64,000 nucleotides of DNA from positions 186,001 through 250,000 of the forward strand of contig CBFDEM010000008.1 of NCBI GenBank assembly GCA_965603825.1. Reading direction: 5' to 3'. Below are positions 31,168 through 61,451 of the stretch, one piece after another; the stretch's first letter is position 1, and each line of letters opens with the position of its first letter. The notes beneath the pieces are model-generated. The model was given only the letters and a program-made list of their open reading frames with translations. It did not search any database and was not told the origin of the DNA. A program made the translations under genes and the position numbers. Source of the DNA: Blepharisma stoltei ATCC 30299. Lineage: Eukaryota > Protista > Ciliophora.

Positions 31168-33637
31168 GTGCCGCTTTACTATTTTCAAATTTTTGATGGG
31201 ACTCTTTTACGATTCTACACCTTATTGAATAGGAGTCTATCAGATACATTTGAAGCATTTTTTAAAAGAAATCCAATTTGCTATAATTTTATTCAGACAA
31301 TAGAAAGAAGATTACCCGAAGTATCAACTGATCTTAAAAATATTCTTTTTGTTAAAAAAAAGAGTCTAAAATAAAAGAATCTATTTGTAAAGGCGAATAT
31401 AAATTAATTTCCAGCTTTAATGATAAGCAAGTCTTATGCTTATTTGATGAACAGTGGTATGATTGCAACAGCAAAGAAGCAAAACAACTACTAAAAGGAC
31501 AGTTGAATTTCGTTTGCCCAACAACTTTGGTTTATTTGAGACTGAAAAAATCTTTGATGGATCACGATATTAAAATAACATCTGAGAAAAGCCAAAGAGT
31601 ACAAAAATTGCTATCTGATAATAGAGTAAAAGAACTTTACAGCAGAAACGCTTCAGCAGAGCGTACAGCTCCCTCTTCTAAAAATTGGTTTAAATCTCCT
31701 GATCCATTTCCAAGTGCGTTCAATCATAAAGCGTCTGGTACAGAATCAAAAATATTAGAAAGTGATGAATATAATAGCGAAAATCACAAAGAAATAAAAG
31801 GAGAGATTAAGTCGATAGGAAATCAGTTTGACAAAAATACTGGATGTGACACTGAAAAAGACGATTTGAAGATAAAAATATTAATTGAAAAGTCCTTAGC
31901 TGACGTAGAGGCAAGATTAAGAAAAGAATTTGAAAGGAAACTCCAGAAAAATTTAGAAATATATAGCCATGAAGAGTCTTTAAGATATCAGCAAGCCAAT
32001 AAAGCCAAAGAAGATTTATTAAACTTTATAGATCCCGAGGCAATTATTGAGAAAGCAAGAAAAAGAGCATATGGCGATCTAGTATCAATTAATAATCAAA
32101 GCTATGAACAGTTTTATAATGTGTATATAAAACCATTGGATGAAAAATTCAAAAATTTTGATTCTAAATTAAAACAATTTGATATCACAAAGAATAATAT
32201 AGATCCAGAGGCAATTATCGAGGAAGCAAGAAAAAGAGCACATGACGACCTAGTATCAACTATTGATCAAAATTATAAACAATTATATAATTTGTATCAA
32301 GAAATAAAATCAAGTTCTGCAATTGATTTAAAAATACTGCAAGAGTCTAACCAAAATACTGAATGCAAGCTTGCTGAATTGGAAAATTATTTGAAACCTA
32401 AAATTGGTATGCTTAATCTTAAATATGACAATTTGGATTCTTCTTTCACAAGCAAACTGGAACAAATTAACCAGAAATTTATAAATATTCCAAGTAAGCA
32501 ACAAATCGATGAGACTTTAGCGGGTCTCCAAACTAAAATTGAGAGCTGAAATAAAGAAACAGAAAAAAAACTAAAGGATTGGGAAGCCTTATCATCAGCT
32601 GACAAAAAATTCAATAAAGAGAAAATTGATAGCTTTGAAAATAAGATACAGCAATTAGAACATAAAAAAAATGCCAAAATTACAGTCGAATTCGACTATT
32701 CTCAAATTGTGCCTAGTAACCAACCTATAATATCTCCTCAGCCAAAGATCCTTCCTCTAAATTTGGTTAAAGATCTCTTAAATGATCCAGAAATTCAAGC
32801 CGAAGCCCCATGTATTAGTAGCCAACAAGAAGCTCCAAGGTTAAAAGCGGATCACAGCAAAGCTTTCAGCAAATCTGGGTTGCCTAATATGTGAAATACT
32901 AGCTATATGAATTCTCTTATTCAAATCTTAGCAAGCGCTACTGAATTTGCGGAGTTTATAAAGAATTGCTCCTCTGATAAATTACTGAGAAGTTTGACAC
33001 AAGTTATACAATTAATACAATCTAATTCTCCAGAGCATCAAATAAGACCCCATATAAAAGAAATCAAAGATATCATCCCAGAAGAATACTCGATAGTAAA
33101 TTTTAACGGGTTTTATAAAAACGATCCTAAAGATTTATTTATAATTATTTCAGGTAAAGTTGGGAACCCTGAGCTCTTTTCTATCATCAAAAAACAATCA
33201 TTTACTTGCCAATTTAACCATAAAGAAGAAAAAGAAGACAATCAAAATTTTATAAATATTCCAGAAAATCAGCAAAATGACATAGAAAGCTTCTTAAATT
33301 GGCTAAAAGATTGGAAAAAATTTTCAGGGCAAAATCAATTACATTGTGCAAATTGTGGAGGAATGAGAGATATTGTAATGAAAACTGAAAGCATTCAATG
33401 GCCACGCATTTTAGCAATTTATATGCCTAGTCAGTTATCACAAGAAATCCCAAGTTCTTTGCAGGTTGAAAATAATTTTTACAATCTTTTCGGAGTCATA
33501 TGCTGATATGAGAAAAATTTTATTGCATTTACGAAAAATGATGAAAATGAATGGGAGAAGTATAATGATTCTGATGTGAGCAAAGCAGATCCTGATTGGA
33601 ATAGGCTTTACCTGCATTTTATAAGAAAAATAATTAA
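31168..33637 (+). pseudogene. USP-A: catalytically dead USP-like paralog, 5' truncated, frameshifts near 31355 and 33612
   Basis: Cys box reads GLPNM[W]NTSYMNS (C>S); His box reads GVIC[W]YEKNFIAF (H>N). The C-terminal 1 kb is highly similar to USP-B. Confidence 0.75.
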
Positions 33638-34223
33638 TTCTATTCTCTTTCGTTTGAACATGATTAAGCTTATTGACTTAAAAGACTAATAAAAGATTAA
33701 AAAGAATCATATACTATGGTTTAAAATAATGTTATGACTATATATTTAATGCTTTAAATTTTCCTTTATCTTTTTTAAGATTCCATCAATTCTTTCACAT
33801 AAAGCAAAGCTATTAAATAGAGAAACTTATAATAATAATAATAATAATAATTAATAATTAATTCGATATAACCTGTGGAATAATGTGTCAACTTTTTCTT
33901 TTCACAATTTATTCTTCTTGCCAAATAATTCAATAATTCAACGAACAAAATTTTAATATTTCAGCTGTCTTGTTTCAATCTTAACAAAGCAGATAACTTA
34001 TACTAAGTTATTTAATTTCTTATTTAATATCAGCTCTTAATTTATGCTATTTTTGATTTATTGTTTAAAATGATAATCTCAGCCTTAGCCTGATTTAATA
34101 AGCTATGCCCTATCTATTCAACAGAATTTTATAATAGTTAATTATCAATATTTTATAGCCTGAGATAAAGTTAGTTTAGGCGAAATCCATATTTTCATAT
34201 TAGATTTGTAGAATTCAATAAAT

Positions 34224-36604
34224 ATGAGCACTTCTAATTTAAGAACTGTGTGCTACGTAATAGCTGCAATCAACAATAGCAGTACTCTCAATAATCTCAA
34301 CTTCCAAATTTATGAAAAAGAAATGAGTGAAACTATAGCTAAAGCTTTCAGAATCCAAATTCGAGAGAGCAATCTTAAAAGGTTCTACAACTTATTAGGC
34401 AAAAGCCTTTCAGATACATTTGAAGCAATTTTTCAAAGAAACCCAACTTGAAGCAGATATATAACTCTGAAAATAGAAGTTCAAGCTTACCAGAAGTATC
34501 AACTAATCTAAAAGATGTTCTTTTTGTTTATAAATGAACGTCTAAAATAAATGCATATATTTACGAAGGCGAATATAAGCTAATTTCCAGTTTTAATGAA
34601 AGGCAAGCCTTTTGCTTATATAATGAGCAGTGGTATGATTGCAACAATAATAGAGAATTATTAATAAAAGGATCACCTGATTTCACTTTTCCAACAACTT
34701 TGGTTTATATAAGAGTTAAAAAACCTTTGATAGTAAACAACGTTGAAATAGCATCTGAGCAAAACCGAAGAGCACAACAATTAGCATTTGAGATTAAATC
34801 AAATGGAATTGCTAAAAGAAATACTTTAGCAGAGTCTGCTTCTGTTTCCAGAAATCTTTCCAGCTCTCCTAAATCATTATCTCAAGAAAAAGACTATCAA
34901 AAGCCTATTTTTATATCAGAACCTCCAGAAAAAGCAAGATATAATAAAGAAGAGTCAAAAGAAATAGCAGAAGACAATAAGTCTAAAGAGAAAGAATGTT
35001 GCAAAATTGTTGGTTCTGAAGACAAAGCAATTGATAAGAATATAGAAATATTAAATCAAAGATGCTTAGCTGACCTTGAGGAAAGATTAACAAAAAATTT
35101 TGAAGTAAAGCTCAAGAAAAGTTTAAAAGAATACAAAAATGAAGAATCTCAGCAATTCAATAAAGCCACAAAAGATCTACTTATCTCTATTGTTAATTAT
35201 GATAAAATGAATGAGGAAAAAATAATGAAAATGAAAAATGAGCTAATAAATTTAGAAAAAAAATGCTTTGGTTTATTACAAAATTTGCCGCAGGGATTAA
35301 AATCTTTAGATGCCAAATTCAAAGAGCTTGATCTTAAAAAAAATATTGAAATGCTCAATCTTAAATATGATACTTTATCAAAAGACTTGGAAACTTCTAT
35401 CATAAGCAAACTGAAACAAATTGACAAGAAATTTATAAATATTCCAAGCAAGCAACAAATCGATGAGACTTTAGCAAGTCTTCAAATTAAAATTGAGAGC
35501 TGAAATAAAGAAACAGAAAAAAAACTAAAGGATTTGGAAGCCTTATTATCAGCTGACACAAAATTCAATAAAGAGAAAAATGATAAGCTCGGGAATGGCT
35601 TTGAAAATAAGATACAGCAATTAGAACACAAAAAAAATGCCAAAAGTCAAATCGAATTCAGTTATTCTCAAATTGTGCCTAGTAGCCAATTTGTAATATC
35701 TCCTCAGCCAAAGATCCTTCCTCTAAATTTAGTTAAAGATCCCTTAAATAATCCGCAAATTCAAGCCGAAGTTCCATGCATAAGTAGCCAGCAAGATCTT
35801 CCAAGGCTAAAAACGGATCAAAGCAAAGCTTTCAGCAAATCTGGATTACCTAATATGTGAAATACTAACTATATGAATTCTCTTATTCAAATTTTAGCAA
35901 GTGCAACTGAATTTGTGGAGTTTATAAAGAATTGCTCTTCTGATAAATTACTGAGAAGTTTGAGCCAAGTTATTCAATTAATACAATCTAATTCTCCAGA
36001 TCATCAAATAAGACCCCATATAAAAGAAATTAGAGATATCATCCCAGAAGAATACTCGATGGTAAATTTTAACGGGTTTTATAAAAACGATCCTAAAGAT
36101 CTATTTAGAATTATTTCAAGTAAAGCTGAGAATCCTGAGCTCTTTTCTATCATCAAAAAACAATCTTTTACTTGCCAATTTGACCATAAAGAAGAAAATG
36201 AAGACAGTCAAAATTTTATAAATATTCCAGAAAATCAGCAAAATGACATAGAAAGCTTCTTAAATGGGTTAAAAGAGTGGAAATTTTTTTCAGGGCAAAA
36301 TCAATTGCATTGTGCAAATTGTGGAGGATTGAGAGATATTGTAATGAAAACTGAAAGCATTCAATGGCCACGCGTTTTAGCAATTTATATGCCTAGTCAG
36401 TTATCACAAGAAATCCCAAGCTCTTTGCAGGTTGAAAATAATTTTTACAATCTTTTCGGAGTCATATGCTGATATGAGACAAATTTTATAGCATTTACGA
36501 AAAATGATGAAAATGAATGGGAGAAGTATAATGATTTTGATGTGAGCAAAGCAGATCCTGATTTGAATAGACTTTATCTTGCATTTTATAAGAAAAATAA
36601 TTAA
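34224..36604 (+). CDS. USP-B: catalytically dead USP-like protein (N-domain, coiled coil, USP domain); one frameshift near 34480
   Basis: GLPNM[W]NTNYMNS (C>N), YETNFIAF (H>N), WEKYND, LYLAFYKKNN-TAA 36602-36604. Confidence 0.7.
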
Positions 36605-36680: not shown

Positions 36681-39110
36681 ATGGAGTCTTCAGTCATCTC
36701 TTTCTGTCAGAACTGGTCAATAGTTTCAGCAATTTATATTTTTCAAGCAATTAATATAAATCAGCGTCTCAATCCAGATACAACTACAGGATATAACTTA
36801 AAGCAATGACTTGAAGAAGCAGCTCAGTGCCGCCTACCCTCAATTGATTTAAGCAAGTTTAATAGCCCAGTTTCCCAAAGCAGTTTACAAGACAGACTAG
36901 ATGAGCTTTATTCCCTACTTAAAAATAATGATATCCCCAATCAAAAGCGATCGATAAAATATTTATCAATTTCAAATAAAAAACTCATGGACGATAATCA
37001 AATAAATAAAAATACTATTGCTTTTTTCGCAAGGCTTGAAGGATCAGGAAATATTCAAACAAATCTTATGATAAAAAACGTCAATTGAAGGCTTGCTGCA
37101 GTCTTTTCAGGGAATCCAAAGATTTGCTTTTGCTATATTGATAATCAATGGAAGAATTTAAGCTGCAAATGTATGAACAATAATTGAAATGGATCTGACA
37201 CTATTCTTTGCTATACCAAAGACAAAAAACTAGAACCGATAAGTATAAATATCTCGAATCTGCAGAACACAGACTGTTTATTCTGCATGGGAAATAAAAA
37301 TGCAGTAAAGAATGAAAAGAAAAATGCAGGAAAAGCGATAAATAAAGGCAACTTAACTGCTAATAAAAACAGCCTTAAAGAAGAGAGCAAAATTGAGACT
37401 CCTCAAAAGAAGAAGAAAAATAATAATAATTGTATAGAGGGGCAAAAAAAAAAAGGCAGCTCCGGTAACTGTCGTATTTCGATAATAAATAACTCAACAA
37501 AACTAAGTGTTTTTACTAAGCCTATTACTTGCGTCGATTTTTTATCTAAAACTAGTGAATCAAATACAAGAGAGTCTGATATATCAGTCCCACAAGATCC
37601 TGCATTTCATGACTTCTCATGCCAATATTCACAAGGAGATCTATTCCCTAGCCAAGGTCCTATTTTTCAAGACTTCTCATGTCAATATTCCGAAGAAAAT
37701 TTGTGCCAGAATCAAAAACAAAGTAATTTCGACAAATGTTTTGACCATCAAAAACAAATTGACAGCTTGAAAAGCAAAATAAAACAGCAAGAAAAAAAAA
37801 TCGAGGATCTAGAGTTAACTTCTAAAAATGAAGCAAGAAAAGGGGAAAAAAAAGAAATTTTGCTTAATTTAGAGAATAGCAAAAGAGAAATTAATGATTT
37901 AAAAGAGACTATTGATGATAAAGAAAGAAAAATTAAAAAATTAGAACAAGAATTAGAATGTGAAAAAAGTAAAAACAAAGATTTTAGCATAAAGGAGATT
38001 GACAGTTTAAAAAAACTAAACGAGGAAATGAATAAATCAGATGAGAAAAGCAATAATCCTCCACAAAGTACTCTATGATGCTTTAAAGAATTAAGAAGAA
38101 ATTTTTTAATAATTGAAAATTCAAAGGAGAGTATCATGATAGCTTCAACTATGAAAAACCCTATTAAAATGACTGAAAGTTGTAAAGAAATCAATAATTA
38201 TGACCAAATTAAAAATAAAAATGCAATTTTTGAAGAAGAGAAGGCAGTTAAAGAAAACTTAAATATATATTCAGTGCCAATTTTTCAATATAGAAAATGG
38301 GGACTGCCTAATATAGGAAACAGCTGCTATATGAATTCTTTATTACAAATTTTAGCTAGTACTAACTGCTTTGTAAAAGCAGTTCAAAATATTTCGAATT
38401 GTCCTATGCTTGAAAAAATCTCGATATTAGCAGAACAAATTAGAAACAAGTCAACTAAAATGCAAGCTTTAATATCATCTCTAGAAAACTTTAGATTAGA
38501 AATAGGCAAACAATTTCCACACGTAAGTTCTACTTAGATAAGCTCATTTGCACAGCAAGATTGCAAAGAAATTTTTCAAATAATTGCAGCTTCCCTAGAC
38601 GAAATTATTCCAAATAATAATATTTTTTCTATTTTTGTCAAGCAAAATCAATATTGCTACTCCTGCAAGCGAGAGACTCATTTGCTTGACGAATACCAGA
38701 GCTTTTTAATAATCCCAACAACTAGTCAAGGAGATTTGAAAACTGTAGTAAAAGAAAGGGTTACAATGGAAAAAGTTTATGCTAAGAAAAATCAATTATT
38801 TTGTGAAAATTGTAAAGGAAAAAGAAAAATTAAGATCAAAATGGTAGAACATAAATGGCCTGAAGTCCTTGTTTTGTATTTTCCTGAAGAAAGCAGGCAG
38901 GTTAAACTAGATGAAAACTTAGATGTTGGAGAATGTAAATTTTTATTGTATGGAGTAATCAAATATATTGGCTCTGGCATGTTTGGGCACTATACTGCTA
39001 TGACCAAAGATGGAAAGATTTGGAATATCTACAATGACGATAAGGTTTATAAGACCCAATTTGAAGAAGAGGATAAATATTTAGCATTTTATAAGAGAAT
39101 AAACAATTAA
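36681..39110 (+). CDS. USP-C: compact ubiquitin-specific protease (C19), intact triad; intron 38523-38537
   Basis: Open from ATG 36681 with TGA=Trp. GLPNIGNSCYMNS; after splicing FAQQDCKEIF; FGHYTA; WNIYNDD; YLAFYKR. Confidence 0.85.
38523..38537 (+). other. 15-nt spliceosomal intron (representative of nine at the homologous USP position)
   Basis: GTAAGTTCTACTTAG. Equivalents at 40880-94(-), 45009-23(-), 47870-84, 50746-60, 53008-22, 55145-59, 56305-19(-) and 60398-412(-). All are GTAA...TAG with TA at positions 9-10, and removal deletes an in-frame TAG in front of the QQD box. Confidence 0.9.
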
Positions 39111-39499: not shown

Positions 39500-39980
39500 T
39501 ATGATGCTTGATTGTTTTCCACATCTAAAAGGGAATATCTATTAAAGCTAAAAGAAAATAATGGCTCTATGTCTTTATACAGGATAAATTCTAATAAAGT
39601 CACTAATAGTTCTTGGGCATCTTGCTGGCCCCCATGTATAAATACAGGAAATGCTGCATCAATTTCATATTTTTAACAATCTTACTTACGCATTTTGAGA
39701 CGTTTAAATAGCAGATGTTTCTAATAAAAGTTCTACTGAGGCTTCATAAATTTATCTTGCATAAGCCATGCAAAGATTTGCCTGGTCTTCATTGTGGACT
39801 TCAGGAAGAATACGTGAATTTCTTGGAATTTTCTGACAGCAAGCACGGATAAATGCAAATTGGCAGGGCTGTTTTCTTTTAAATAATCAGTATGCATAAA
39901 AGGCTTTAATCCTTAATAGAAATCTCATATGGTCGAAAATCATAATTGAAAAGTTTTCTTCCTTTTTCAACTGTCCCATG
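39500..39980 (-). pseudogene. USP relic (Cys box and QQD box fragments)
   Basis: Minus strand gives RNICYLN and YEIDAAFPVFIHGGQQDAQELLVTLLEFI in different frames with stops. Confidence 0.65.
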
Positions 39981-40336
39981 TTTTAAATAATAAGGATAAT
40001 CATCATGCAAAGAGAATCATAATTAATTATTTATTTTTAAGAATTAATTATTATTTGCATAGATATATTAATTTATTTTTATATCTTTCTTTATTAGCTC
40101 TTCTTCCTGAAAAGCCTAAAACATTATTTAAAAAATGGCATAAAAGAAAGCAAATTAACTCATATTTATTTCATATTACAGATAGAGAAAATCATAATAA
40201 AATATATAAATTGCTGACTAAAAGCTATTTCAAATATAACTAAATTGCATTATTATCCTAGATATTATAAATAATCTGTAAGAGCTCGCTATTTTTAATT
40301 TTAATAATATTTATAAAATAGCTATAGGATTTATGA

Positions 40337-42787
40337 TTAGTTTTTCTTATAAAATGCAAGGAAAAGTCTACCCCAATCAGGATCCTTTTTACTTACTTCA
40401 GAGTCATCATACTTCTCCCATTCATTTTCATCATTCTTAGTAAATGCTATGAAATGGTATCCATAATAACATATTACTCCAAAAATTTGGTAACTATTAT
40501 TTTCAAGATTCAGCATTTCTGGGATTTCTCCTAAAATCTGCCGATCAGATATATAAATTGTTAAAATTCTCGGCCATTCAATCCTTTCAGTTTTCATTAC
40601 TATATCCTTCAATTTTCCACATTCCTCACAGCTTAATTGATTTTTCCCTGAAAAACTCTTCTGCTCTTTAATATCATTTAAGAAAGCCTCTATATTATTT
40701 TGCCTATTTTTTGGTATTGCTATAAAATTTGTGCTGTCCTCACTTCATGATTTATGCTTAAAGCGAGAATTACAAGTGAATGATTGATTTTTTACAATAG
40801 TGAAAAGACTTTTATTCTCAACCTTATTTGAAATAATAATAAATAATTCCTTTGCATCATTTGCAGATCTTCCGCTGTACTAAATAAAATTTACCATTGA
40901 GTATTCTCTTGAAATTAATTGCTTAAAGTTTTCGATAAGTGGGATTGTTTTATTTTTTCCATAGTTAGCATTTATTGATAATATAACGGAATTTAAGCTC
41001 TGCAGTAAGTCATCGCCAGGAATGCTGTATAAATATTCAGCAAAATCAGCTGAGCTTGCTAATATTTGTATAACTGAATTCATATAACAAGTATTTCCTA
41101 TGTTTGGTAGGCCAGATTTGCTAAAACGCTGAGGTCTTAAGCTTTGAGTCTGTATGTGGGCGTTTAATAGTTGAGCTTCCCTTTCAGATCTCTCATTCTG
41201 AGCGTTTATATGATGGTTTTGTGGGAGTGTCCTTGTTTGGCTATAAAAATCTGGGTTGGATGTGATTTGAGGTTGATTTGATATAGCAAGAGTCTGACTG
41301 GGAATTCCAGATTTATATTTTTCTATTTCACTTTTAATACTTTTGATGTCTTCATTAACATAAAATTGCCAATTCTGTATATCCTTATTATAATTCTTTG
41401 ATTTCTCAATTTCACCAAAAAGACTATCTAGCTTTTCATCAGATTTATTTTTTATTTTCTCAATATCTTTTAATTCTGATTTTATTTTTTCAATAGAAAT
41501 TTGGTTTTCATTTTCAATACTTTTAATTTTTCTATTTAAATCCTCAAAAAATGAAGAATTTTCGGATAGACCTTCGCTATTGGCTTTGCAGTTTTTTTGC
41601 AACTCATTTAATTCAGCTTTAATACCCTGAAGTTGCATATCGGTATATTCTTTGCAGGTATCAATAACAGAATTAGCTTTAGCCGATTAGATTTCCAATT
41701 CATCTAATTTGGAAATTATTTCACTATTATTTGCATTTACCGCTGATTTCATATAGTCCAATATCCTATCACCTTTAAGTAATTCTTCTGTGCTGAGACT
41801 ATTATTTTGTTTTTCTTCATTATCCTTGAAGCATTTTTCCAATTCTTTCACTTTATTTAAAAGCATTTCTTCTCAGTAATTAAAATTGTTTTCTAGCTTG
41901 TTCTGCATATCTATAATTTCTCCCTCACTTTTTGCTTCTATATTATTGGCTATTGAACCTATTTTCTCTTGGAATTGCACCAATAATTTCTCTATTATTT
42001 CTTTGGATTTAGATTCCAAATCCTTTTCTATTTTTTTAGCTAGTTTTTCTTCTAAATAAGTGAAATAATTTTCAATAGTGGTTGAATTTGATATTATTTG
42101 ATTATAATTCTGTTTATTTTCTAATATTTTGGGATTAGTGTCAAGAATTTCATATTGATTACTGTAGTCGAAGTTTGACAAATTGCCTCCAAGAGAGTTG
42201 AGAGAAGGAGATAGTTCTCTTCCATAATCAGGGCTGTGCTCATAGCTAGGGTTTTGAACAGAAATTTGATCGTTAACCAGAGGGTTTAAGTCCTTTCTTA
42301 AATAAACTAAAATTGCTGGGAAAGATGCATTTGAATATTTTGATACTCTAGGCTTATTTCCAGTACAATCATACCAATCCTCGTTAACCTTGCACTTGAC
42401 TTGAGATATATCGATGTGCAAAATTAGCGAGTATTGACTAATTAAATCTGAATTTTTAATTTCAGCTTTTGTAAAAACAACCAGAACTTCTTTCGGTGGT
42501 TTTTTTAAGTAGTATTTTAAATCATTACTTTCTATTGTATTACTAATAAAATTCATACAATTTTTGTTTCTCAAACAAATTTTTTTAAATATTTCTAGAG
42601 TATTTTTACATTCCTGGCAACTTGTATTATCCAATTGATTATCATAAATCCCATTTTTAAATGCATTTGCTATAATTTCATGCAACTCTCTGTCCATTAA
42701 TAGGTCTTCTTGACCCAGATAAGCATGCATGTTGGCGTTAATGGTCGCTATCATCCAGCAGGCCTTCTTCAAATAAGAATTTCTCAT
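40337..42787 (-). CDS. USP-D: compact USP, intact triad; intron 40880-40894; active relative of USP-A/B
   Basis: Three ORFs join via TGA=Trp and a 15-nt intron. GLPNIGNTCYMNS, YYGYHFIAF, WEKYDD, LFLAFYKKN. Confidence 0.85.
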
Positions 42788-49309: not shown

Positions 49310-51315
49310 ATGTCAGAAGAGCTTATAAATACAGTTTATATTCTTGCAACAATCAGTCAGCATATAGAATTTCCTTTCCGAAATTCATGATTAAGCAAAA
49401 TTTTTCAAAATGCTTTTACCTCAGGCATTGATAAAGAAAGCCTTAGAGAACTTGGATATTTAACAGGAAGAAGCTTAAGCGGCACCTTCCATTATGTAAG
49501 AGAAATTATTAGATTTCAGAAATGTGAAGATATTTTTGCTTGGCCAAACAAATTGTTGCATCCATTTCAAGTGTCTGACATACCTAAAAATATTGAAAAA
49601 GCTGCATTTTTTATTACTTGCACTAATAAGGATTATATAGAGGAAATAGAAGGCTACATTTTAGTTGTAAAACTTTTTCAACCTGAAGGAATTTTAGAAT
49701 GTAAACACGGAGAAGAATGGAAGAGTTGCTCATCCCAGAAAATGGGTAATTATAAGCCTAAAAACTTTTCTGTGATTTTGGGCTTTGTAAAAAATTGAGA
49801 AGATATCAAAATTGAAGAAAAGACAGTAGAAGAAAATAAAGATAATGAGGCAAAAACAAAAAATGTTGAAAAAAGCCCACAAGATTTTGAAGAAAATACT
49901 ACTAAAAATATAAATGCGGACCAAATAAATGAAAAACTCAGACAAATGGAAGAAGAATTATCTAAATCTAAACTAAGCAATGAATGTCTCCAAGCCGAGC
50001 TAATGAGAGAAAAATTAAAAAATAAAAATACAAGCAGCAACATGCATCGGGTAAAAGTAATGATTGAAAATATGAGCAAAAAAATTTATAATACTAGGAT
50101 AGATTTAGAAAAAAAATTAATATATTTAAAAGAAAGAGCAGAAGAAAGCCAATTATGTATCAAAAATATCCTAGATAATTGCCAAAGTAAATTTAATCAG
50201 CTTCAATCTTTCGTAGATGACTCCGCTGGCTCAAAAAATGAGCTAGACAATAAAAAACCCGATTTTTCTATAGCTTTTAATGCTATTTCTGATTATTTTC
50301 AATGCAGCAATAAAACTGCTCAAGATTGTCTTCAAAAATTTAAAGAGTTGGGAAATGAATGCTATTCATTAAAAGAGAAGTGCAATGAGATAATAAATGA
50401 GATTGATAGCAAACCCTCATCATTAATAGCAAAAAATAATGAAAGAGAAGAAAAAACCAAAAAAATATTCAGAAGTGAGAATTCTTCTGTATCAAGATTT
50501 TCACATTTCCCGGCTCTCAAAAGGAAAAAATATGGATTGGTCAATATAGGAAATAGTTGCCATCTGAATTCAGTTTTGCAGATTTTTGCAAGTATTCCAA
50601 ATTTTATAGAAAAAATAAGAAACATTGAGAATAACTTATTTTATTCCTTAGGTGAAGTACTATCGTCGATAACAGATCCCTATCCTTTTTTAAATCTGGA
50701 AAATTAAGAAAACTAAGAGACTTGCTTGCTAGAGAAGATCCTATGGTAAATTATATTTAGTTTGGCGGAAGCACTTATAATGACTGCAAAAAATTATATG
50801 TTATTATCGTAAATTTATTTATGGAACTTACCAAAAATAGCATGTTTTTAATAAACAAAAATGAAGCTGTAGTTTGTGAAAATAACCACAGGAAAGAATT
50901 ATCTGAGCCTCAAGTGTTTTTAACTATACCTGATAATGAATTAGGCATCAAAGATTGATTAAATCAGCTCGAAAATGACCAAAAATTATATAAAGGAGAT
51001 GATAATTTATTTTGTGAAGATTGTGGGCATAGATCTGATTCAGATATCGTGACAAAAAGCATTAAAGCTCACGAAATTTTAGCTTTATGTAATGCCAAAA
51101 GTAAAAACTCGATTGGAAATATTCCTAATCGTGTTTCCTTAGGCCAAAGTCAGTATGAAATATTTGGAATAATTTCATACAGCGAAAAACACTACATAGC
51201 TTATACAAGAGAAGAGGGAATTTGAAATGAGTATAATGATCAGGAAGTCAGAGAAAACAAGTCTCCAAACCCCAAAACTAGCTATATGCTGTTTTATAGA
51301 AAAACTTACCATTAA
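49310..51315 (+). CDS. USP-G: tandem paralog of USP-F; frameshift near 50695; intron 50746-50760
   Basis: MSEELINTVYIL vs MSEDLKKAAYIL; GLVNIGNSCHLNS, KHYIAY, [W]NEYND; TAA 51313-51315. Confidence 0.7.
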
Positions 51316-51632: not shown

Positions 51633-53631
51633 ATGTCAGACGCTGCCTTATGAAATTTAAAAGCTACTCTATTAATAGTGAGCTCTTTGACAAGATATGT
51701 AGACCTTAGGTTTCCTTATTTATTATGGCCATTTGTAGATCAAGTCTTAAATAATTTAGAGGAAGGTCTTGAACAATATAAAAATTTCTTAAATCCTTTA
51801 TCCAGGAATCTTGAAGAAATTTTAGCTTGAAACAGATGAGCCATCTCTTGCAAAAATATAGATTTATTAAATTTAAAGATACAAGAGAGACTTCCTTGTG
51901 GAGAGATATTAATAATAAAAAGTTATTCTCAAAATGTTTCAGCTGTAGTCAAAGAAGCTCAATATACGTATTTTCTTGTATCTGCTCTTTCATGCAATGG
52001 CAACATTGTATATATTTGAAAAGATGGAGCTTGGAAACGAGAAAGCTCTGACTCTTCTTATTCTAATAGTTTTTATGAGCTTTACTATTTTTACTATTGC
52101 AAAATTACTCCAAAATCTATTTCTAAATTATTGCGATTGGACGATGTTTGCAATACAAATGATAACTTATTTCAAGTAATGATAAAAATATGAAATTTTA
52201 CTAAAGAAAGCAAAAATATATTTGATTTTGATGAAGAAATAGAGGCTAGAATGAAATATAGCGGAATAATCGAAAAAATTAATAAAGAAAAAGAGGATGC
52301 TCAAGCAGAAATAGCAAGATTAGAATCAAATAACAAAAATTTAGAATCAGATATTAAAAAATATAAAGAATATATAGAGGAATATATAGAGGAATATCAA
52401 AGAAATGAAAACAATTTAAAAAATTTGAATTACTCTTGGGAAGAAAAGTGCAAATCGCTTGATAATGAGCATCAAAAGCTCACGAAAATGACTAAAGAAA
52501 AAGAAGAGAGCAGCAATGAAGCTATCAAGCTACTTAATCAAAAAATTATTGATTTGCAAAATGAAAAAAATATTTTAGAAGCTGAAAATTTTTATCTTAA
52601 AAATTCTCTTTCAGAAAAAGAAAATCTCCTACAAAAAGCATCAGATGAGCACCACAAAATCTCTGAAAAATATAATATTTTGCAAGAAAAATGCAAAAAT
52701 CTTAAAGAAAAACTAAATAAAGCCAATTATTCACAAATACTCTACAACCCAGAAAATGAAATTGTTCAATTACCTCCAAACACAAAGCACGGGCTGCCTA
52801 ACCTTGGAAATACCTGCTATTTAAATTCTCTTCTGCAGATTTTTGCAAGTACTCCTCTTTTTGTAAGTAAAATTGCCTCTATTGATTCTCCTTTTTGTAA
52901 TTCTTTGTCATCTCTTTTATCTAATATGCATATTGAAAACAGCTCTAAGACAATCAGCAATTTAACTAGAAATTTCTCAAAAACATCTAATGGAGGCTTA
53001 TTCAAATGTAAAAATTATTTAGATTAAGGAGTACACTCAGCAAGATGTGAAAGAAGTGTTTAACATGATTTTAAGCAAAATTGAAGAGGAAGGGGGAAGC
53101 TTTAATATTTTTTCAATTGTTTTTCATCAGGTTTTCAGCTGCTTGAATCTGCATAAGTCAACTTATGATGATACCCAAACGTTTTTGATCATTCCTCCTC
53201 AGCATAAAAATGCACAAGACAATTATCTTAGAAATCAAAGCTACTATTATAGATCAACACAGTCATTATTTTGTAATGACTGCAATAGAAAAATTGATAT
53301 GAGCATAGAGCTGAAAGGTGTCGATTGGCCAGAATATCTGGTGCTTTATTTCCCAACACCTCCAAATAATATTGTAGAATCCCTCTGAATTAATAATGAG
53401 AATAGCTATGAAATTTATGGAGTTATTTGTTATTATCAAAATGAAGGAAGTTTTCATTATACAGCGTTTACAAAAGACGGAAATATATGGAATGAGTATA
53501 ATGATAAATATGTTGGGACAAAAGCAATAGACCCTCATTTTGTAAATTTGGCATTTTATTCCAAAAAAGTAGTGCTGAGCCAAAATATGATAGCTGAAAA
53601 GCCCTATCAGTCGCATTTTTATAATTCTTAA
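51633..53631 (+). CDS. USP-H: compact USP; frameshift near 52978; intron 53008-53022
   Basis: Open from ATG 51633 with TGA=Trp. GLPNLGNTCYLNS, YTQQDVKEVF, SFHYTAF, WNEYND. Confidence 0.72.
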
Positions 53632-53753: not shown

Positions 53754-55741
53754 ATGCAAGATGATATACAATGAAATCTTAGACACTGCATGAGCTCTTA
53801 CTAGCTCTCTTTGACAATTTATCGATTTTCCTCCCAGCACTGAGTCTCAGGACATTAATTATAAGCTTAGAGATAAATATTTTATAACAACTAATTACTA
53901 TTATAAGACAAGAACTTTTTATGAAACTTTGCAAAGTATTAGAAGAAAGTAATTGAATAATTTCTTGTGTTGATGAAAAACTAATAAGTATGAGAGTTCA
54001 AGATAAACTTCTTTGTGCTGGAGATGAAATATTAATAATAAAAGGCTCTTCAGAAATAAATATATCAGCAATAGCAAAAGAAGGACTTAATAGCTATTTT
54101 CTTGTAGCAGCGCTCTCATGTGATGGAAGGAGCCTTATCTATTGAAAAGATGGAATATGGAACAACGACTTCGAGAGGCACTTACATGAGAAGAAATGAG
54201 CTCTATTATTTTTATTATTGCAAGGCGAATCAAGCAAGAATACATGAATATCTAAGAATTAAGTATTATCCGGCTAATATTCCGGACATTACCATGTATT
54301 GGAAAATATATGAAAATATAATAGAAGCTGCGAAAGTACATCTGACTACTTCTGCAATAATGGATTGCCAAATAGAGATACCATTAATGAAGAAAATAAA
54401 AATACTTTTGCTGTCGAAAGTAATGAGAAATTGAGGGAAGAAAATGAGAAAAATAAGTTCACCATTGCAAGTTTGGAAGCAAAAATAACAGAATTAGAAG
54501 GAAAATTAAAAAGCTATCAAAAGCTGCCAAGATCAAATAAACGAATTAGAAAAATCTATAGGGTCTTTAAAATATGATAATGATCTGCTTAAAAATGAAA
54601 ATCAAGAGCTTAAACTGAAAGCCAATTTACAATGAAAAAGAAAAAAATGAATATAAACAAATACATAAGACGAACATTGAAGCTATTGACCAATTAAAAC
54701 GAAACCTTAGCGATAAAGAAGATCAAAACAATAAGCTAGAAAAAGACATTAGCATTTCAAATGAAACTCTTACTAATAAAAATATCGAACTTCTATGAAG
54801 CCATGGAAACAAACAAACTATTACAGGAAAAGCTCAAAGACCTTGAAGAAAAAAATAAAATCAGTAACTCACAAGCACTCTACGACCCAGAAAATGAAAT
54901 AATTAAATTGCTTCCAAACAGAAAGCATGGCTTGCCTAACTTTGGAAACACCTGCTATTTAAATTCTCTTTTGCAGATCTTTGCAAGCACTCCTCTTTTA
55001 GCAAGAAAAGTTGAATCTATAAATTCTCCTTTTTGCAATTCTTTGTATCTGCTTTTAGACAGCATGTTTAAAGATAACAGCTTAAAAACAATCAGAAATT
55101 TAACGCAAGATTTCCGTCAAAATTTAATGGCTACCTATTCAAATGTAAAAAATATTTAGATTGAGGCTTATAATCAGCAAGATGCTAAAGAAGTATTTAA
55201 CATGATTTTAAGCAAAATTGAAGAAGATGGGGGGAACCTTGACTTATTCTCTATCGGATTTCATCAGGAATTTATTTGCAAGACCATGCTTAAGCATCGA
55301 TCTGAGTATCATGATATCCAAATATTTCTAATAATTCCTCCCTGCCATAAGGATTCGGTTGAAAATTATCTTTATTACTTAGGCACTTATTATAATTCAA
55401 CGCAAAAGTTAATTTGTAGCGAATGCAAAAGAGAAGTTAATACAAGCATTCAACTGAAAAAGGTTGATTGGCCAGACTATCTGATACTTTATTTTCCCAC
55501 TCCTCCTGATAGAATCACAGATAGTATTAGAATTAATTATGAAATTATATATGAAATGTATGGAGCTATTTGTTATTATCAAGATGAAGGCTCTTTTCAT
55601 TATACAGCATTTACAAGAGATGAAAATGAATGGAATGAATACAATGATGAGCATGTTGAAACAAAAAAAATAGATCCTCACGTTATAAACTTGGCATTTT
55701 ACTGCAGAAAAACATATTCACGACCAATTTATAGTCGTTAA
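53754..55741 (+). pseudogene. USP-I: paralog of USP-H with multiply frameshifted 5' half and intact USP domain; intron 55145-55159
   Basis: GLPNFGNTCYLNS, YNQQDAKEVF, SFHYTAF, WNEYND; 53754-54760 matches USP-H only in broken frames. Confidence 0.72.
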
Positions 55742-56014: not shown

Positions 56015-57480
56015 TGATCAGTTCATTTTTATTTTGCATTTTTCACAATATAATTGATTATCGCCAAAAAATCCTATGGCTTTTTTAATTCTGCTAAAAA
56101 TTCTTGTATAGAGTAGAATTTTTTACTGGGAATTGTAATAAAAAGGTTTGCTTCAGGTACTTTTGCAATGTGATTACAAACATGACAATTCAAAGTTTGC
56201 TGATATAAGGTTGTAAATAAAGGATCTACATAAGTTAAATCTGATAATTTTCCTATGAGGATGACCATTAATTCTTTAGAGTCCTGCTGAGTAAAATTTC
56301 CAAGCTATATAAAGATTACCCAAGGGAATTCTGCATCAAGTTGATATTTAAAAGAACTTACAAGCTTTTGAGTATCATTAGACCTAGGATTTCTAATACT
56401 CAATAATAGAGACGATAAAGTAGAAAATAATCCATATTCCAAAGTCTGGATTTTTTCATAAAATTCATTATTGCTTGCAAGTACTTGGAGGAGGGAATTA
56501 AGATAGCATGTATTTCCTATATTAGGATCTGATTTTTTCTTGTCAAAAATTAATGGATAGTTTATAACTGGGGGTGGTCTTATTGGTTCAATTTTTTCTA
56601 TTATAAATTTGATCTGAGATTGAAGATTTTGGTTATCTTGCATTAAGATTTGGATTTCTTGCTTTAGATTTTGAATTTTAGTCTTGTGCTTTTTAGATTT
56701 TGCCTGTAGAATTGCATTATCTGCCTGTATAGTTGCATTATATGCTTCTGAAGATTGATATTTATCTATTATCTTATATTCGTTTAATAATTTATCTTTT
56801 TCTTCTGCTTTTATAGATACAGATAGAGGCACTGAAATTGGCTTTAATCACTTTTTTGTACCTATTATTGCTTTAAAAGAAAACTTTTCGTTATCATCCT
56901 TTTCATTATCAAGGTCATTGATTTTTGTATAAACATAAATCGTTACTTCGCTGGGAATTAGTTTTTTTTTACCGTTTGGGTTTTCACTGAGATTTTTTCA
57001 TTTATCTTCAAATTTGCAATACAACTTTCTCTGTCCATTGTAGGTTAAAACTGCTGTTAATAAATAAACGATTCTATTGCCTTCAAAATAAGGAAATGGT
57101 TTTTCCTTGCTTAATCTTTTGAATGTTTTTTCTTCAGAATTATTTGTTCAAAAAATGATTTTTCTTCGTCTTTTTGAGGAAGATACTTTATGCTGAGAGA
57201 TCTATATTGGTCTCTTTCGAAGTATTCTAGAATATATTGGTTAGAAATATCCTCAAAAATTTTTGTCATTAAAAATTCATTGGTAAATGACAAAAAATCT
57301 TGATTTGATTCATAATTTCTTAAGAAAGTGCCTATTTCTGAATGTGGATCTATGCCTTGACAAGCCTTATTGCACAAAAGGATATTGATAATTGCCTTCT
57401 CAGCTAATGAAAGGGGATTTCCTTCCTTAATCGTAGATTTATTATAAATTTGGGCTATTTTTAGATTCCATAAATTATAA
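56015..57480 (-). pseudogene. USP-J: frameshifted USP lacking the His box; intron 56305-56319
   Basis: PNIGNTCYLNS; FPW|LGNFTQQDSKEL after splicing; homology ends after GDNQLYCEKC near 56030. Confidence 0.7.
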
Positions 57481-57603
57481 AGGTATAGAAATATGAAATT
57501 TATATTTCTAAGGCAACTTATCAATTGTTCAGACTTATTACAATGATGAGTTCAAAAATTTATTCACAAATTCCATTATTTTAATTTTAAACATAAATTT
57601 ATC

Positions 57604-57852
57604 TTAAAACCCTCCCTTCATCTGCTGTAGCACACGAATAACGCAGTTATTAGTAAATCTTAATTGTTCCAAAGTAGCAGTTCCTTGAGTGACTACACTC
57701 AAATACTTATTCCCAAAAATCACACTTAATTCACCACCTCCAAACATTTGCGCAAATTGGTTGTGAAGCTGAGCATAAGTCCACGAGCTGTTTACTTGTA
57801 TTGTGCGCTGCTGGCCGTTCATATCTTCTACTCTTATTGTCAAGTTCGACAT
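57604..57852 (-). CDS. Divergent ubiquitin-like protein, 82 aa, C-terminus LQQMKGG-F
   Basis: Ubiquitin-like size and pattern: LTIRVEDMNGQQRTIQV (cf. MQIFVKTLTGKTITLEV), LSVIFGNKYL (cf. QRLIFAGKQL), TLEQL, VIRVL..GG. Clean ORF, more GC-rich than its flanks. Confidence 0.8.
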   Translation of the reverse strand: MSNLTIRVEDMNGQQRTIQVNSSWTYAQLHNQFAQMFGGGELSVIFGNKYLSVVTQGTATLEQLRFTNNCVIRVLQQMKGGF

Positions 57853-57994
57853 TTTATAATTATAAGAAACTGAGATTTGTGAAAATAATTGTAGAATCTT
57901 AATGAAATAAGTACTTTTATAAAGTAAATAAGGAAAAGATAATTATTAAAATGAGAAAACTGCAAATAAGGGCAGCAGTAGAATTATTAAAGAA

Positions 57995-58160
57995 TTAGAA
58001 CTATATGGATTAATATCTAGTATGCAAATTCGTGATGGGCATTATTTGGAATAAGCACGGAATACTAAAAATTGGACTGAGTATAGTCATAAAGGTGTAG
58101 TAAATCTAGTGGCGGCAGAATTGATATAGCAAATGGATATTTTGCCTTTTATATAAGAGC
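57995..58160 (+). pseudogene. USP C-terminal (His box) relic
   Basis: ELYGLISSMQIRDGHYL*..NWTEYS..GYFAFYIR in broken frames. Confidence 0.6.
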
Positions 58161-58331
58161 AGGGGATCGCAATAAGGATAATGATTATTAAAGAAAAACA
58201 ATTTCACAAATATTAATTTTATCTAAGGAGTTATAAATTGAAAAGTAATCCAGAAGATATGCAGAGATAAATTTTATAAATTAATCTAGCTATATCATTT
58301 ATTTTATTTAGGATTCTATAATAATATTAAT

Positions 58332-59795
58332 ATGGTTTTTGGACTCTTAAGAGTTGTAAGCGGTAGGCTCTTGAAAGGTCCAGCTGATAACATCTTGAAA
58401 CTTGCATACTTCTCTTTGTGATTCTCGCTCACTATAGCCTTAATTGTTTATAAAAAAGCATTTCCAAATTCTAAAAATATAAAACAAAGACAGCAGGACA
58501 AAGAAAAATCAATAACATCCAGAATTGTTGATGTATCAAAAAACAATAAATTCTTTGAGGTCTTCAATTTATATCAGATAACCACGTGCGCAAAAATCGC
58601 TGAAAATCTTAAAAACGAATCAATAAACAGATTTGAAATCACTTCTTTTTCCCCCATTCTACTGGGAAAGCCTGGAACTAATGCCATAGTAAGGGCAGAA
58701 AATAGAAATTGATATGATAAAATAAAAAATGATAAAATTCCAGTCTTTATTGGATGGGAAGTTGAAAAGGAAGCATTAGATTGTTTTAAAACTCAAATTT
58801 TATTACGAAATAAGCCAGGAATAATTATTCTATTTTATAAAAACAATGAAGCTGCCATTAAAGAAGAACAAAATTTACTATGGATTACGTCAAATTTAGA
58901 TTCTGAGTGCAATGATATTGAAATCGAATTCAATAAAATTATTGAAATAGCAATTAATTGGGCAGAAAGTAGGAATTACCAATTGGAGCAAAAATTACTC
59001 CAAGGATTGCCTAATATTGGAAATACTTGCTATATGAATTCGTTAATCCAAGTATTCTCAATTATGCCTGAACTTTATGAAATCATTAGCTCCATAAATT
59101 TGCCTCTATTTCAGCCTCTCAAAAATATACTCTTAGCATTGAAAATGAGAAATGATAATTTTAATTACAGATATTACCTGGAAAAATTTCAAACCCAAAT
59201 TATCGAAAACTTTCATATGGTAGGTATCATTTATTTAGTTTACAGCCCATAGTCAGCATGATACTAAAGAGCTATTTAATGTTTTTATAGATTATATAAT
59301 ATCAAAATTTAGAGAGCACCAAGATAAATTTACAATTTTTATCACTAAAAAATTTTATTGTAAAGAAGGCCATCATCATCTTGCAGAGAAAAAGGAAAGT
59401 CAGCTGTTTTTAATCATCCCTAAAAATTATCTTGCAGATATTGATAGTTATGTAAAAAGGAATCATTATTTTAATAATGAAAATCAAATTTGGTGCGAAA
59501 TTTGTGGGAAATGAGAGATATGCAATTAAAAGTTGAAAATGTGGACTATCCTTTGAATCTGACTATTTATGTTCCTGGAAATGGATCGATTGGGAAGCTG
59601 GATCATCAAATTAAACTGAATATTGACAATTATAGATTATATGCAATTATTTGTCACGCAGGAAGTAATTTATTTGGTCACTATTGGGCATATTTACTTA
59701 TAGATGGCAAATGAATTGAATGTAATGACAGCATTGTACGTGAAAGCCCACCCAATTTATCAAACTGCTATATGCTCTTTTATTCTAAGAATTAA
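58332..59795 (+). CDS. USP-K: USP with N-terminal hydrophobic segment; aberrant intron 59220-59238; frameshift near 59510
   Basis: LAYFSL[W]FSLTIALIVYKK; GLPNIGNTCYMNS; SQHDTKELF; FGHYWAY; K[W]IECND; YMLFYSKN-TAA. Confidence 0.7.
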
Positions 59796-59854
59796 TTAAG
59801 CCTCACAATTAGCTTTTATTTAAAATTTAAAGTTTTATTAATATATCTTATGAC

Positions 59855-61451
59855 CTATGAGCTTATAAAAAACGCAAGATAGCACGAACTGAAATCTGGC
59901 TGCCAAATCTTCGAGTTATTATCTAAATATTCTCTCCATGCACATCCATCTTTTGTATATGCGACATATTTCTTCACGTTTTCTATCTGATAAAGACATT
60001 TGATTGCTCCATATATTTCATATTTTGATTCCATATAATTAAATTCTTCAGGAAGAATATATTGATTTTCCATTGGCAATTTTAATATTAAAAATGATCC
60101 CGCTTCAATGTGTTCTACTGTTCTGCTCACCAATTTAGTTTGATTGCAAATACTGCAAAATTCTTCACATCAAATAGTTGTTTTTATATTTTGATCAATT
60201 TCTTCGTGAATTGGTTTATTTGTAAAATTCATAAACTCAATTACATTTATATAGTCATTTTTTATATTTTCATGCCCAACTCCACAATTAACTCTTGTCG
60301 TTAATATAGTTGAAAATAATTTTTGATTTGGACAATATTCATGCAGCTTATTTATAAGTCAGTTGATCACATTTTTAGGGTCTTTTTCAAAATTAGCCTA
60401 TATAAAATTTACATAATAAGAGTTCTGTGCTAAAGTTATGCTAAAATCCGATAGTAAATTATCAACGAAGTTTTGGAAATTTGACCTTTTCATAGCATTA
60501 AATAAAATATTTAAGCTCAGTAGCGTTGGGTCCATTGGACTTTTTGATAATTCAACAAATAAAGATGAGCTAGCAAGAATCTGCAATGCTGAGGTGAGGT
60601 AGGAATTATCATTTATATCAGAAAATCCATGTTTTTGGCCAGGGAGAAGAAAAATCATTGAGGTAAATAAATCACCATTTCCTACTGTTCGGTAAGCTTG
60701 GCTTGAGCTGAGATGCTGATTTTCAGCTTGAAAGGTATGATAATTCCCTGGCTCATAATAAGCACTTCTTGATAAATTTAAATTACTTAGAACAGGCTCC
60801 TTATCTATGCTTACTTGGCTTGAATTTTCAATAAGTTGACTGAGTCTTTTTACTTCATTTTTCAAATCAGCCACGTCTATTTCTAAGCTTTTTATTTTCG
60901 CTGCAGTATTTTCTCTATTAATTTCTATTGTCCTCTCATTTCCTGGATTTTGCCCGCCCAGCACACAGCTATTGGCAATATCCCCATAATTAATAAACTC
61001 ACTTATAAAACTTTCTAGCTGTGATTGGACGTCATTAGGATCATTAAGCAGTAGGATTTTTAGCAATGGGTCTTCCTCATTTGTCCTTATTTCTTTCGTT
61101 GTCAAAATTTTTCTTATATATTTGTCAATTATTCTGATTCCTAATTCTAGCGAATTTAACCCATTTTTATTGATTTCTTCAAGGTTTTTCATATTTGTAG
61201 AAACATATGAGATAAGTTGTGATTTAATATTGTTTATTTTTGATTTTTCTTCTTGAAAAGATCGCAAAATGCTTATCTGGGCTGGGCTTGACAGGCTCAC
61301 GATATAGGTATTCAAACCTGTGAGTTAAAGGGCTAGAATTGGAATGGGATTTTTTATGTCGTTTGCAAAAAACTAACTTTTCAGCCTGGCAGTCGCAAAT
61401 GTATTTAGGCTTTTCGTGGCATGATGGGATGCTACAAATATTGTAGTTCAT
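59855..61451 (-). CDS. USP-L: Zn-motif + coiled coil + dead USP domain; frameshift near 61285; intron 60398-60412
   Basis: CSIPSCHEKPKYICDCQAEKLVFCKRHKKSH; Cys box GFSDINDNSYLTSALQIL (C>S); His box VKKYVAYT (H>K); CYLAFF. Confidence 0.7.

What the first reader, a model, noticed from the sequence alone, without database searches (positions are those of the whole stretch)
31168..61451. Subtelomeric array of about 14 compact USP proteases physically linked to a novel ubiquitin-like modifier: candidate dedicated UBL/protease system
Seen: 30 kb contain almost nothing but USP-fold loci (12 long loci and 2 relics) plus one intact UBL gene (57604) and a decayed copy of it (43487), each sitting between USP genes. 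The catalytic domains are only about 255-270 aa (GLPN.GN.CY to FY.K). Known: USPs (peptidase C19) cleave after a C-terminal diglycine, and canonical cores are usually about 350 aa or more. Inference: the UBL was duplicated inside this array and may be the cognate substrate. That would be a lineage-specific conjugation/deconjugation module evolving by birth-and-death, as defence gene clusters do.
Basis: partly seen in the sequence, partly recalled or inferred. Interest (0 to 1): 0.9.

Follow-up and report, generated by a model that had tools for sequence, protein, structure and literature searches.

The report
Clustered private ubiquitin-like pathway in ciliates
The ciliate Blepharisma keeps gene clusters that appear to encode a protein-tagging pathway of its own (a ubiquitin-like tag, the enzymes that activate and attach it, and the proteases that remove it), and rumen ciliates seem to have evolved the same kind of cluster independently.

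Summary
Confirmed and larger than reported. It is a partly decayed sister of about seven clusters holding nearly all members of this UBL family and USP clade. The best-preserved ones also carry a UBA1-paralog E1 (47-48% to canonical UBA1) and UBE2D-like E2s; no E3 was found in them. All parts show purifying selection; UBL and USP genes appear in RNA contigs. Specificity surfaces are remodelled: E1 crossover loop changed in 8/8 cluster E1s, kept in 117/117 others; UBL residue 72 is Gln; E2s lack the loop-1 Phe; USPs lack KRF. Rumen-ciliate nanochromosomes carry E2-UBL-E1-USP-USP cassettes whose E1 arose separately (AU p=4e-5). Best reading: a dedicated, cluster-encoded UBL conjugation/deconjugation pathway (0.8); a defence role is plausible but untested. 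Earlier scan notes flagged UBL/USP/E2 linkage, not the E1 or the second lineage. No paper describing this was found.

The parts
31168..33641 (+). USP-1: catalytically dead USP (Cys to Ser, no His), intron retained in frame, interrupted at both ends in the assembly; 96% nt copy of the C12 telomeric gene
34224..36604 (+). USP-2: catalytically dead USP (Cys to Asn, no His), N-terminal frame interrupted; dN/dS 0.29 against USP-1
36681..39110 (+). USP-3: intact, 803 aa, Cys/His/Asp present, 15-nt intron 38523-38537, N-terminal USP-like domain and coiled coil
39544..39672 (-). USP relic
   Evidence: tblastn E 9e-10
39685..40016 (-). Decayed fragment of a cluster-type E1 (UBA1 paralog) gene, 82% nt to the C11 cluster E1
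40337..42787 (-). USP-4: triad intact, one in-frame TAA in the linker (about 41687), intron 40880-40894
43475..43731 (+). Decayed UBL of the C11 type: start lost, frameshifted, no diglycine
44442..45431 (-). USP-5: intact, 323 aa, hydrophobic N-terminal segment (possible membrane anchor, inferred), intron 45009-45023
45762..45950 (+). USP relic
46397..48442 (+). USP-6: intact, 675 aa, triad present, intron 47870-47884
49310..51315 (+). USP-7: triad present, frameshift near 50690 in the assembly
51633..53631 (+). USP-8: triad present, frameshift near 52990 in the assembly
53760..55741 (+). USP-9: catalytic domain intact, N-terminal part frameshifted (annotated as a 321-aa product, P0275)
56074..57575 (-). 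USP-10: truncated, His box missing, several frameshifts
57604..57852 (-). Intact 82-aa ubiquitin-like protein ending KGG-F (precursor form); beta-grasp fold; about 22% identical to ubiquitin; dN/dS 0.16 against the C15 paralog
57959..58167 (+). USP relic (C-terminal part)
58332..59795 (+). USP-11: triad present; 19-nt intron 59220-59238 spliced in an RNA contig; the frameshift at 59505 is absent from contigs of four runs, so the gene is probably intact
59855..61451 (-). USP-12: catalytically dead USP (Ser for Cys, no His) with an N-terminal Cys/His motif; conserved in the C15 and C18 clusters (dN/dS 0.31-0.48); frameshift at 61282 absent from contigs of three runs
61914..64000 (+). Macronuclear telomere repeat

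Best explanation
The window is one partly decayed copy of a family of B. stoltei gene clusters that encode a private ubiquitin-like modification pathway. Shown: the genes, their linkage, folds, intact catalytic residues in the best-preserved cluster (C15), selection and transcription. Inferred: cluster USPs trim the short tail after GG to mature the UBL; the cluster E1 (a fast-evolved UBA1 duplicate) adenylates it and holds it as a thioester; cluster UBE2D-like E2s take it over and attach it to targets either directly or through an unlinked E3; cluster USPs remove it; dead USPs and the fingerless N-terminal USP-like domains act as binders or regulators. The window's UBL would rely in trans on the E1 and E2s of the C15/C11/C18/C9 clusters, since its own E1 has decayed. 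The most likely purpose is cell-autonomous defence against viruses or endobionts (about 0.5 given the pathway), by analogy with ISG15 and bacterial Bil and from the rapid turnover of copies.
For: Linkage: 24 of 27 UBL-family genes, 5 of 7 UBA1-type E1 loci or relics and 21 of about 110 E2 hits lie within 10 kb of a clade USP, a zone that is 0.9% of the genome. C15 holds E1, 7 E2 loci, 4-5 UBLs and about 13 USPs in 37 kb with almost nothing else. Cluster E1 is 47-48% identical to B. stoltei UBA1, keeps the ATP motifs and the catalytic Cys (C15, C11a), and sits on a long branch within heterotrich UBA1. The crossover-loop D-S/T-x-D-P motif is kept in 117/117 non-cluster E1s and lost in 8/8 cluster E1s; this loop reads ubiquitin Arg72 (PMC12355090), and the window UBL has Gln there. 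All 14 cluster E2s examined lack the loop-1 Phe and keep HPN and Cys. No cluster USP has the KRF motif. dN/dS 0.15-0.55 across UBL, E1, E2 and USP pairs. An 89%-identical UBL with the same GG-F end is in an MMETSP transcriptome. Independent parallel: rumen-ciliate nanochromosomes with E2, GG-UBL, E1 paralog and 2-4 USPs; canonical UBA1 genes have no such neighbours.
Against: No biochemistry: neither charging nor cleavage nor conjugates were observed. No E3 found in the clusters (RING motif scan, HECT; C9 not read). The linkage counts are not independent events because the clusters derive from each other by segmental duplication, and C35 is an identical copy of C15. UBL tails vary widely (residue 72 is Q, K, R, Y, C or F; two end in GC), so one E1 may not serve all. 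One C11 E1 lacks the catalytic Cys and the other is frameshifted. A polyubiquitin gene lies next to the C18 cluster. No sign of positive selection in pairwise dN/dS, which weakens the defence reading.
Confidence: 0.8

Rival explanations
1. The clusters are an auxiliary ubiquitin pathway: the E1 paralog, E2s and USPs still handle ordinary ubiquitin (alone or with the UBLs, as UBA6 does), and the UBLs are secondary substrates or competitors.
For: All enzymes derive from ubiquitin enzymes (UBA1, UBE2D, USP); the Gln608-equivalent of E1 is kept; polyubiquitin gene beside the C18 cluster.
Against: Ser621/Asp623-equivalent positions are changed in every cluster E1 and in no other; KRF lost in all cluster USPs; UBL diglycine conserved under purifying selection.
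Confidence: 0.12
2. The UBLs are not conjugated to proteins; the UBL-E1-E2 chain ends at the E2 or modifies a non-protein target (lipid, nucleic acid, small molecule), with the USPs only maturing the UBL.
For: No E3 in the clusters and E3-binding loop changed in all E2s; some UBLs end in GC or lack GG between repeats.
Against: E2s keep the HPN motif used for isopeptide formation; many USP paralogs suggest many substrates to deconjugate; E3-free protein conjugation is known from bacterial Bil (10.1101/2023.09.04.556158).
Confidence: 0.05
3. A duplication-prone region that gathered ubiquitin-system genes by chance, with no functional coupling.
For: Many pseudogenes and mosaic segmental copies; a non-LTR element beside C15.
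Against: The content is almost only E1, E2, UBL and USP; purifying selection on all; the same four gene types recur on single rumen-ciliate nanochromosomes with a separately derived E1.
Confidence: 0.02
4. The cluster is of viral or other foreign origin (giant viruses carry compact USPs).
For: The nearest non-Blepharisma hits of the compact USP are 270-aa giant-virus USPs at 26-32%.
Against: Those keep KRF and probably score because they also lack insertions; cluster USPs share a host-type 15-nt intron; the E1 nests in heterotrich UBA1.
Confidence: 0.01

Closest known systems
Vertebrate ISG15 system (ISG15, UBA7, UBE2L6, HERC5, USP18)
   Same: UBA1 duplicate as dedicated E1 (UBA7 arose so, PMC11354881); a USP-family protease; precursor with a tail after GG; one- to three-domain UBLs here resemble the two-domain ISG15/FAT10 layout.
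   Different: No sequence kinship beyond the fold; ISG15 keeps LRLRGG while these tails are changed; ISG15 genes are scattered and single (own knowledge), these are clustered and multicopy; no linked E3.
Bacterial Bil (BilABCD) anti-phage operon
   Same: UBL, E1, E2 and deconjugase encoded together, no E3.
   Different: Bil uses a bacterial E1 and a JAMM protease; here a full UBA1-type E1, UBE2D-like E2s and C19 USPs derived from the eukaryote's own ubiquitin genes.
Caldiarchaeum/Asgard ubiquitin gene cluster
   Same: Operon-like cluster of UBL, E1, E2 and deubiquitinase (PMC3082918, PMC11354881).
   Different: Archaeal, ancestral, includes a RING E3 and JAMM; the ciliate clusters are derived and recent.
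UBA6-FAT10
   Same: Paralogous monomeric E1 serving a multi-domain UBL with a non-ubiquitin tail.
   Different: The cluster E1 is closer to UBA1 and nests in ciliate UBA1; FAT10 needs no processing.
Lineage-specific E1/UBL pairs reported for moulds and bivalves (recalled from memory, not found in the library, unverified)
   Same: Repeated birth of private UBL systems by E1 duplication.
   Different: As recalled these derive from UBA6; I could not check whether clustering or ciliates were described.

Membership tests
USP / peptidase C19 | UCH domain with Cys box and His box | tested here: met
   Pfam UCH 71.6 and 90.6 bits over cut-off 23.9; PDB USP hits
USP / peptidase C19 | Cys-His-Asp/Asn triad | tested here: met
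   Present in 8 of 12 window loci, absent in USP-1, -2, -12, His box deleted in USP-10
USP / peptidase C19 | Box-4 K/M/R-R-F motif typical of ubiquitin-cleaving USPs | tested here: not met
   0 cluster USPs have it; six giant-virus compact USPs have it or KRY
USP / peptidase C19 | Cleavage after diglycine | not testable with these tools
   needs assay
Type I (conjugatable) ubiquitin-like modifier | Beta-grasp fold | tested here: met
   AlphaFold2 pLDDT 88; Foldseek TM about 0.8 to SUMO, ubiquitin, ISG15
Type I (conjugatable) ubiquitin-like modifier | C-terminal diglycine, exposed or followed by a short tail | tested here: met
   GG-F in the window; GG plus 0-14 residues in most paralogs
Type I (conjugatable) ubiquitin-like modifier | Activation by E1 and covalent conjugation | not testable with these tools
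   inferred from linked E1 and E2
Ubiquitin, NEDD8, SUMO, ISG15, FAT10, UFM1, URM1, ATG8/12 orthologs | Sequence orthology | tested here: not met
   Pfam ubiquitin 17 bits, below cut-off; no PDB sequence hit; 17 identities to ubiquitin; no close kin outside Blepharisma
UBA1-type monomeric E1 | IAD-FCCH-4HB-AAD-SCCH-UFD architecture with catalytic Cys | tested here: met
   Pfam domains; Cys aligned to human Cys632 in the C15 gene
UBA1-type monomeric E1 | Crossover-loop pocket for ubiquitin Arg72 | tested here: not met
   Ser621/Asp623 equivalents are Ile/Gln, Ile/Trp, Thr/Gln
UBE2D/Ubc4-5 E2 | UBC fold, HPN and catalytic Cys | tested here: met
   best PDB hits UBE2D, E 3e-34
UBE2D/Ubc4-5 E2 | Loop-1 Phe62 used for E3 binding | tested here: not met
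   absent in 10/10 Blepharisma and 4/4 rumen cluster E2s; role of Phe62 from own knowledge
Bil / ISG15-like defence systems | Conjugation to pathogen proteins and protection on infection | not testable with these tools
   no infection data
Bil / ISG15-like defence systems | Homology of components to BilA-D or ISG15/UBA7/USP18 orthology | tested here: not met
   E1 nests within ciliate UBA1; protease is USP, not JAMM

The most novel reading that the evidence does not exclude
Ciliates have repeatedly (at least twice) built operon-like clusters encoding complete private UBL pathways from duplicated ubiquitin machinery, working without a linked E3 as an innate immune system that converges on ISG15 and bacterial Bil; Blepharisma runs several UBL types and tandem pseudo-USP/USP proteases within it.
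Probability: 0.4. Interest if true: 0.96.

Novelty: new variant of a known kind. Interest (0 to 1): 0.9.

Why it matters
Eukaryotes are thought to use a short fixed list of UBL pathways with eight E1s, and gene clusters encoding a whole pathway are known from bacteria and archaea. These clusters name all partners of a new pathway at once, so it can be reconstituted from four proteins. Two independent origins give a natural experiment on how E1, E2 and USP switch specificity away from ubiquitin, offer orthogonal tagging tools, and give a direct handle on the open question of how ciliates defend themselves against viruses and endobionts. They also suggest a simple screen (E1 with altered crossover loop next to a GG-ending ORF) for hidden UBL systems across eukaryotes.

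Tried and rejected
Standard code and TAR=Gln code: rejected, TGA=Trp with 15-nt introns gives clean models. Known UBL family membership: Pfam and PDB sequence searches below cut-off. Profile search of 1.8 billion representatives returned only B. stoltei members plus polyubiquitins and unrelated multi-UBL proteins at 33 bits or less per domain. ESM Atlas gave unnamed clusters only. E3 in clusters: none by RING pattern or HECT profile; RBR and U-box profiles not run. Viral origin of the USPs: rejected as above. Shared ancestry of Blepharisma and rumen cluster E1s: rejected by AU test. Spliced gene models were built only in local scripts; remote searches used single exons by reference or database proteins. 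Ten literature searches found no description of such clusters; the library lacks most subscription papers. Stentor: only canonical UBA1s appeared among the top 120 E1 hits, but more divergent E1s fall below that list, so absence is not shown.
Full report
Source and code. The window ends in (CCCTAACA)n telomere repeats from 61914. It is G000:C8:186001-250000 of a 41.46-Mb, 64-contig assembly, and homologs are named Blepharisma stoltei. TGA=Trp and 15-nt GT..AG introns give clean gene models.

What is in the window. Twelve long USP loci lie between 31.2 and 61.5 kb, with cores of about 251-263 aa and one shared intron about 210-220 nt after the Cys box. USP-3, -5, -6 and probably -11 are whole with Cys/His/Asp. 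USP-1, -2 and -12 lack Cys and His. USP-4, -7, -8, -9 keep the triad but carry a stop or frameshift in the assembly, and USP-10 is truncated. RNA-type contigs of four runs from one study cover 55.8-61.5 kb over genes and not over the 57.9-58.3 kb spacer, show the 19-nt intron at 59220-59238 removed, and lack the frameshifts at 59505 (four runs) and 61282 (three runs), so these two are likely assembly errors (contigs cannot rank expression, and paralogs contribute). The UBL at 57604-57852(-) is 82 aa, ends KGG-F, has 17 identities to ubiquitin, misses the Pfam cut-off and folds as a beta-grasp (pLDDT 88, TM about 0.8 to SUMO, ubiquitin and ISG15). The decayed UBL near 43475 is a C11-type paralog. 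The array is a mosaic of segmental copies of other clusters: 31-36.6 kb matches C12 (up to 96% over 3 kb), 42-51 kb C11 (81% over 4.6 kb), 56-61.5 kb C18 (93% over 3.9 kb). It includes a decayed E1 fragment at 39685-40016.

Genome-wide linkage. The UBL profile has 37 hits; all but those on C1, C41 and C24 lie at C8, C9, C11, C12, C15, C18, C35 or C55, the places where the compact-USP profile scores high. ThiF and E1 searches put full-length UBA1-type genes in the C15/C35 and C11 clusters, and UQ_con puts 21 E2 hits in them against about 1 expected. The C15 cluster (654-691 kb) reads almost purely as UBLs (one-, two- and three-domain, GG plus short tail), about 13 USP loci, 7 E2 loci and one E1. 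The nominal p-values overstate the case, because the clusters are copies of each other and C35 duplicates C15 exactly. C8, C11, C12, C15 and C35 abut telomeres; C18 is internal. C9 and the small sites on C38, C37 and C28 are known from coordinates only.

Signs of a private specificity. The cluster E1 is 47-48% identical to B. stoltei UBA1 while heterotrich UBA1s are 61-83% identical to it, and it forms a long branch among them. The C15 gene keeps the ATP-binding motifs and the Cys that aligns with human Cys632, but the positions of Ser621 and Asp623 are Ile and Gln. This crossover loop forms the acidic pocket for ubiquitin Arg72, a main specificity filter (PMC12355090); the window UBL has Gln at 72. 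The motif is kept in 117 of 117 other E1s in my set and lost in all 8 cluster E1s. Cluster E2s are UBE2D-like with HPN and Cys but all lack the loop-1 Phe, which by established knowledge is central to RING/HECT binding. No cluster USP has the KRF motif. The 170-aa N-terminal domain of the long USPs folds as a USP core without fingers: the top 35 structural matches are all USP-family, best Z 7.6, which is a modest score; it has no His, so these look like pseudo-USP/USP tandems. Pairwise dN/dS is 0.16 for the window UBL against C15, 0.18-0.28 for E1, 0.15-0.30 for E2, 0.29-0.55 for USP cores and about 0.3 even for dead USPs; the C18 triple UBL (0.82) looks relaxed. An MMETSP transcript encodes an 89%-identical UBL with the same end.

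A second lineage. A metagenome scan with the cluster E1 returned seven loci. Four carry E2, a short GG or GG-plus-tail UBL, a UBA1-type E1 and two to four USPs within 8-10 kb, and a fifth has E1 next to a USP end. They have (CCCCAAT)n telomeres, the rumen-ciliate repeat (bioRxiv 10.1101/2022.01.05.474053); L048 is a complete 7.9-kb nanochromosome holding only these five genes. Their E1 crossover loops, E2 loop 1 and USP box 4 are altered in the same places. In trees these E1s group with a separate UBA1 clade, presumably their hosts' own, and Blepharisma's with heterotrich UBA1; a single clade is rejected (p-AU 3.7e-5; quick tree, compositional bias noted). Three canonical UBA1 genes checked as controls have unrelated neighbours.

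Mechanism. Shown: linkage, folds, catalytic residues, selection, transcripts. Inferred: USP trimming of the pro-UBL, activation by the cluster E1, transfer to cluster E2s, attachment without a linked E3 (none found), removal by cluster USPs, with dead USPs as binders. The window's UBL would use E1 and E2 from sister clusters. Confidence 0.8 for a dedicated pathway. Purpose: defence is the leading guess (about 0.5) from the analogy with ISG15 and Bil and the birth-and-death pattern; development or stress roles are not excluded and no positive selection was seen.

Novelty. UBL conjugation is a known kind of system and clustered versions are known in prokaryotes (PMC3082918, PMC11354881, 10.1101/2023.09.04.556158). 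I found no paper on eukaryotic clusters of this sort or on these ciliate genes; a half-remembered report of UBA6-derived private systems in moulds and bivalves could not be verified. Earlier scan notes on this genome mention UBL/USP and UBL/E2 linkage but no E1. Verdict: new variant of a known kind, interest 0.9.

Noticed in passing
L048, L050/L055, L051/L058, L052, L049 (rumen metagenome contigs): Rumen-ciliate nanochromosomes carrying E2 + GG-UBL + divergent UBA1-type E1 + 2-4 USPs; a system worth study in its own right.
   Followed up: yes
G000:C55:255878-258742 (-): A second divergent UBA1/UBA6-type E1 (45% to the cluster E1 over 743 aa), not linked to the USP clusters; sequence not read.
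   Followed up: no
G000:C27:183-205 kb, C35:594-596 kb, C2:119-122 kb, C12:46-49 kb: Arrays of short two-domain ubiquitin-family ORFs that are not members of this UBL family; possible further modifier set.
   Followed up: no
G000:C18:551640-552344 and C55:12046-12249: A triple head-to-tail UBL without GG between repeats, and a second UBL, both ending LKGC instead of GG.
   Followed up: partly
G000:C18:546031-546957: Polyubiquitin gene with three canonical units and a diverged fourth, directly beside the C18 cluster.
   Followed up: no
G000:C15:649-653.7 kb: Non-LTR retroelement-like ORFs (endonuclease and long RT-like frame) flanking the C15 cluster.
   Followed up: no
G000:C50:333-453 kb: Array of about seven divergent HECT domains; candidate unlinked E3s, untested.
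   Followed up: no
window 59220-59238: A 19-nt intron, longer than the usual 15-16 nt, spliced in an RNA contig.
   Followed up: yes
window 57519-57900: Contig depth over the UBL is 30-80 in three runs and 2-3 in the fourth; may mean regulation, but contig depth is a poor measure and paralogs add to it.
   Followed up: no
window 28636-30966 (-), 26915-27988 (+), 7073-10246: Kelch-like plus TPR gene, a papain-family protease with a 15-nt intron, and a 468-bp tandem repeat in a Cys-rich coding region.
   Followed up: no
window 61684-61920 (+): ORF with a Cys-rich N-terminal motif cut by telomere addition.
   Followed up: no
P0188, P0218, P0224, P0254, P0264 (L042): Metagenomic 3-5-domain UBL proteins, several ending in GA; contig too short for context.
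   Followed up: partly
L043-L047: Giant-virus-like contigs with stand-alone 270-aa USPs next to ribonucleotide reductase small subunit; shows compact USP cores are not unique to this clade.
   Followed up: partly
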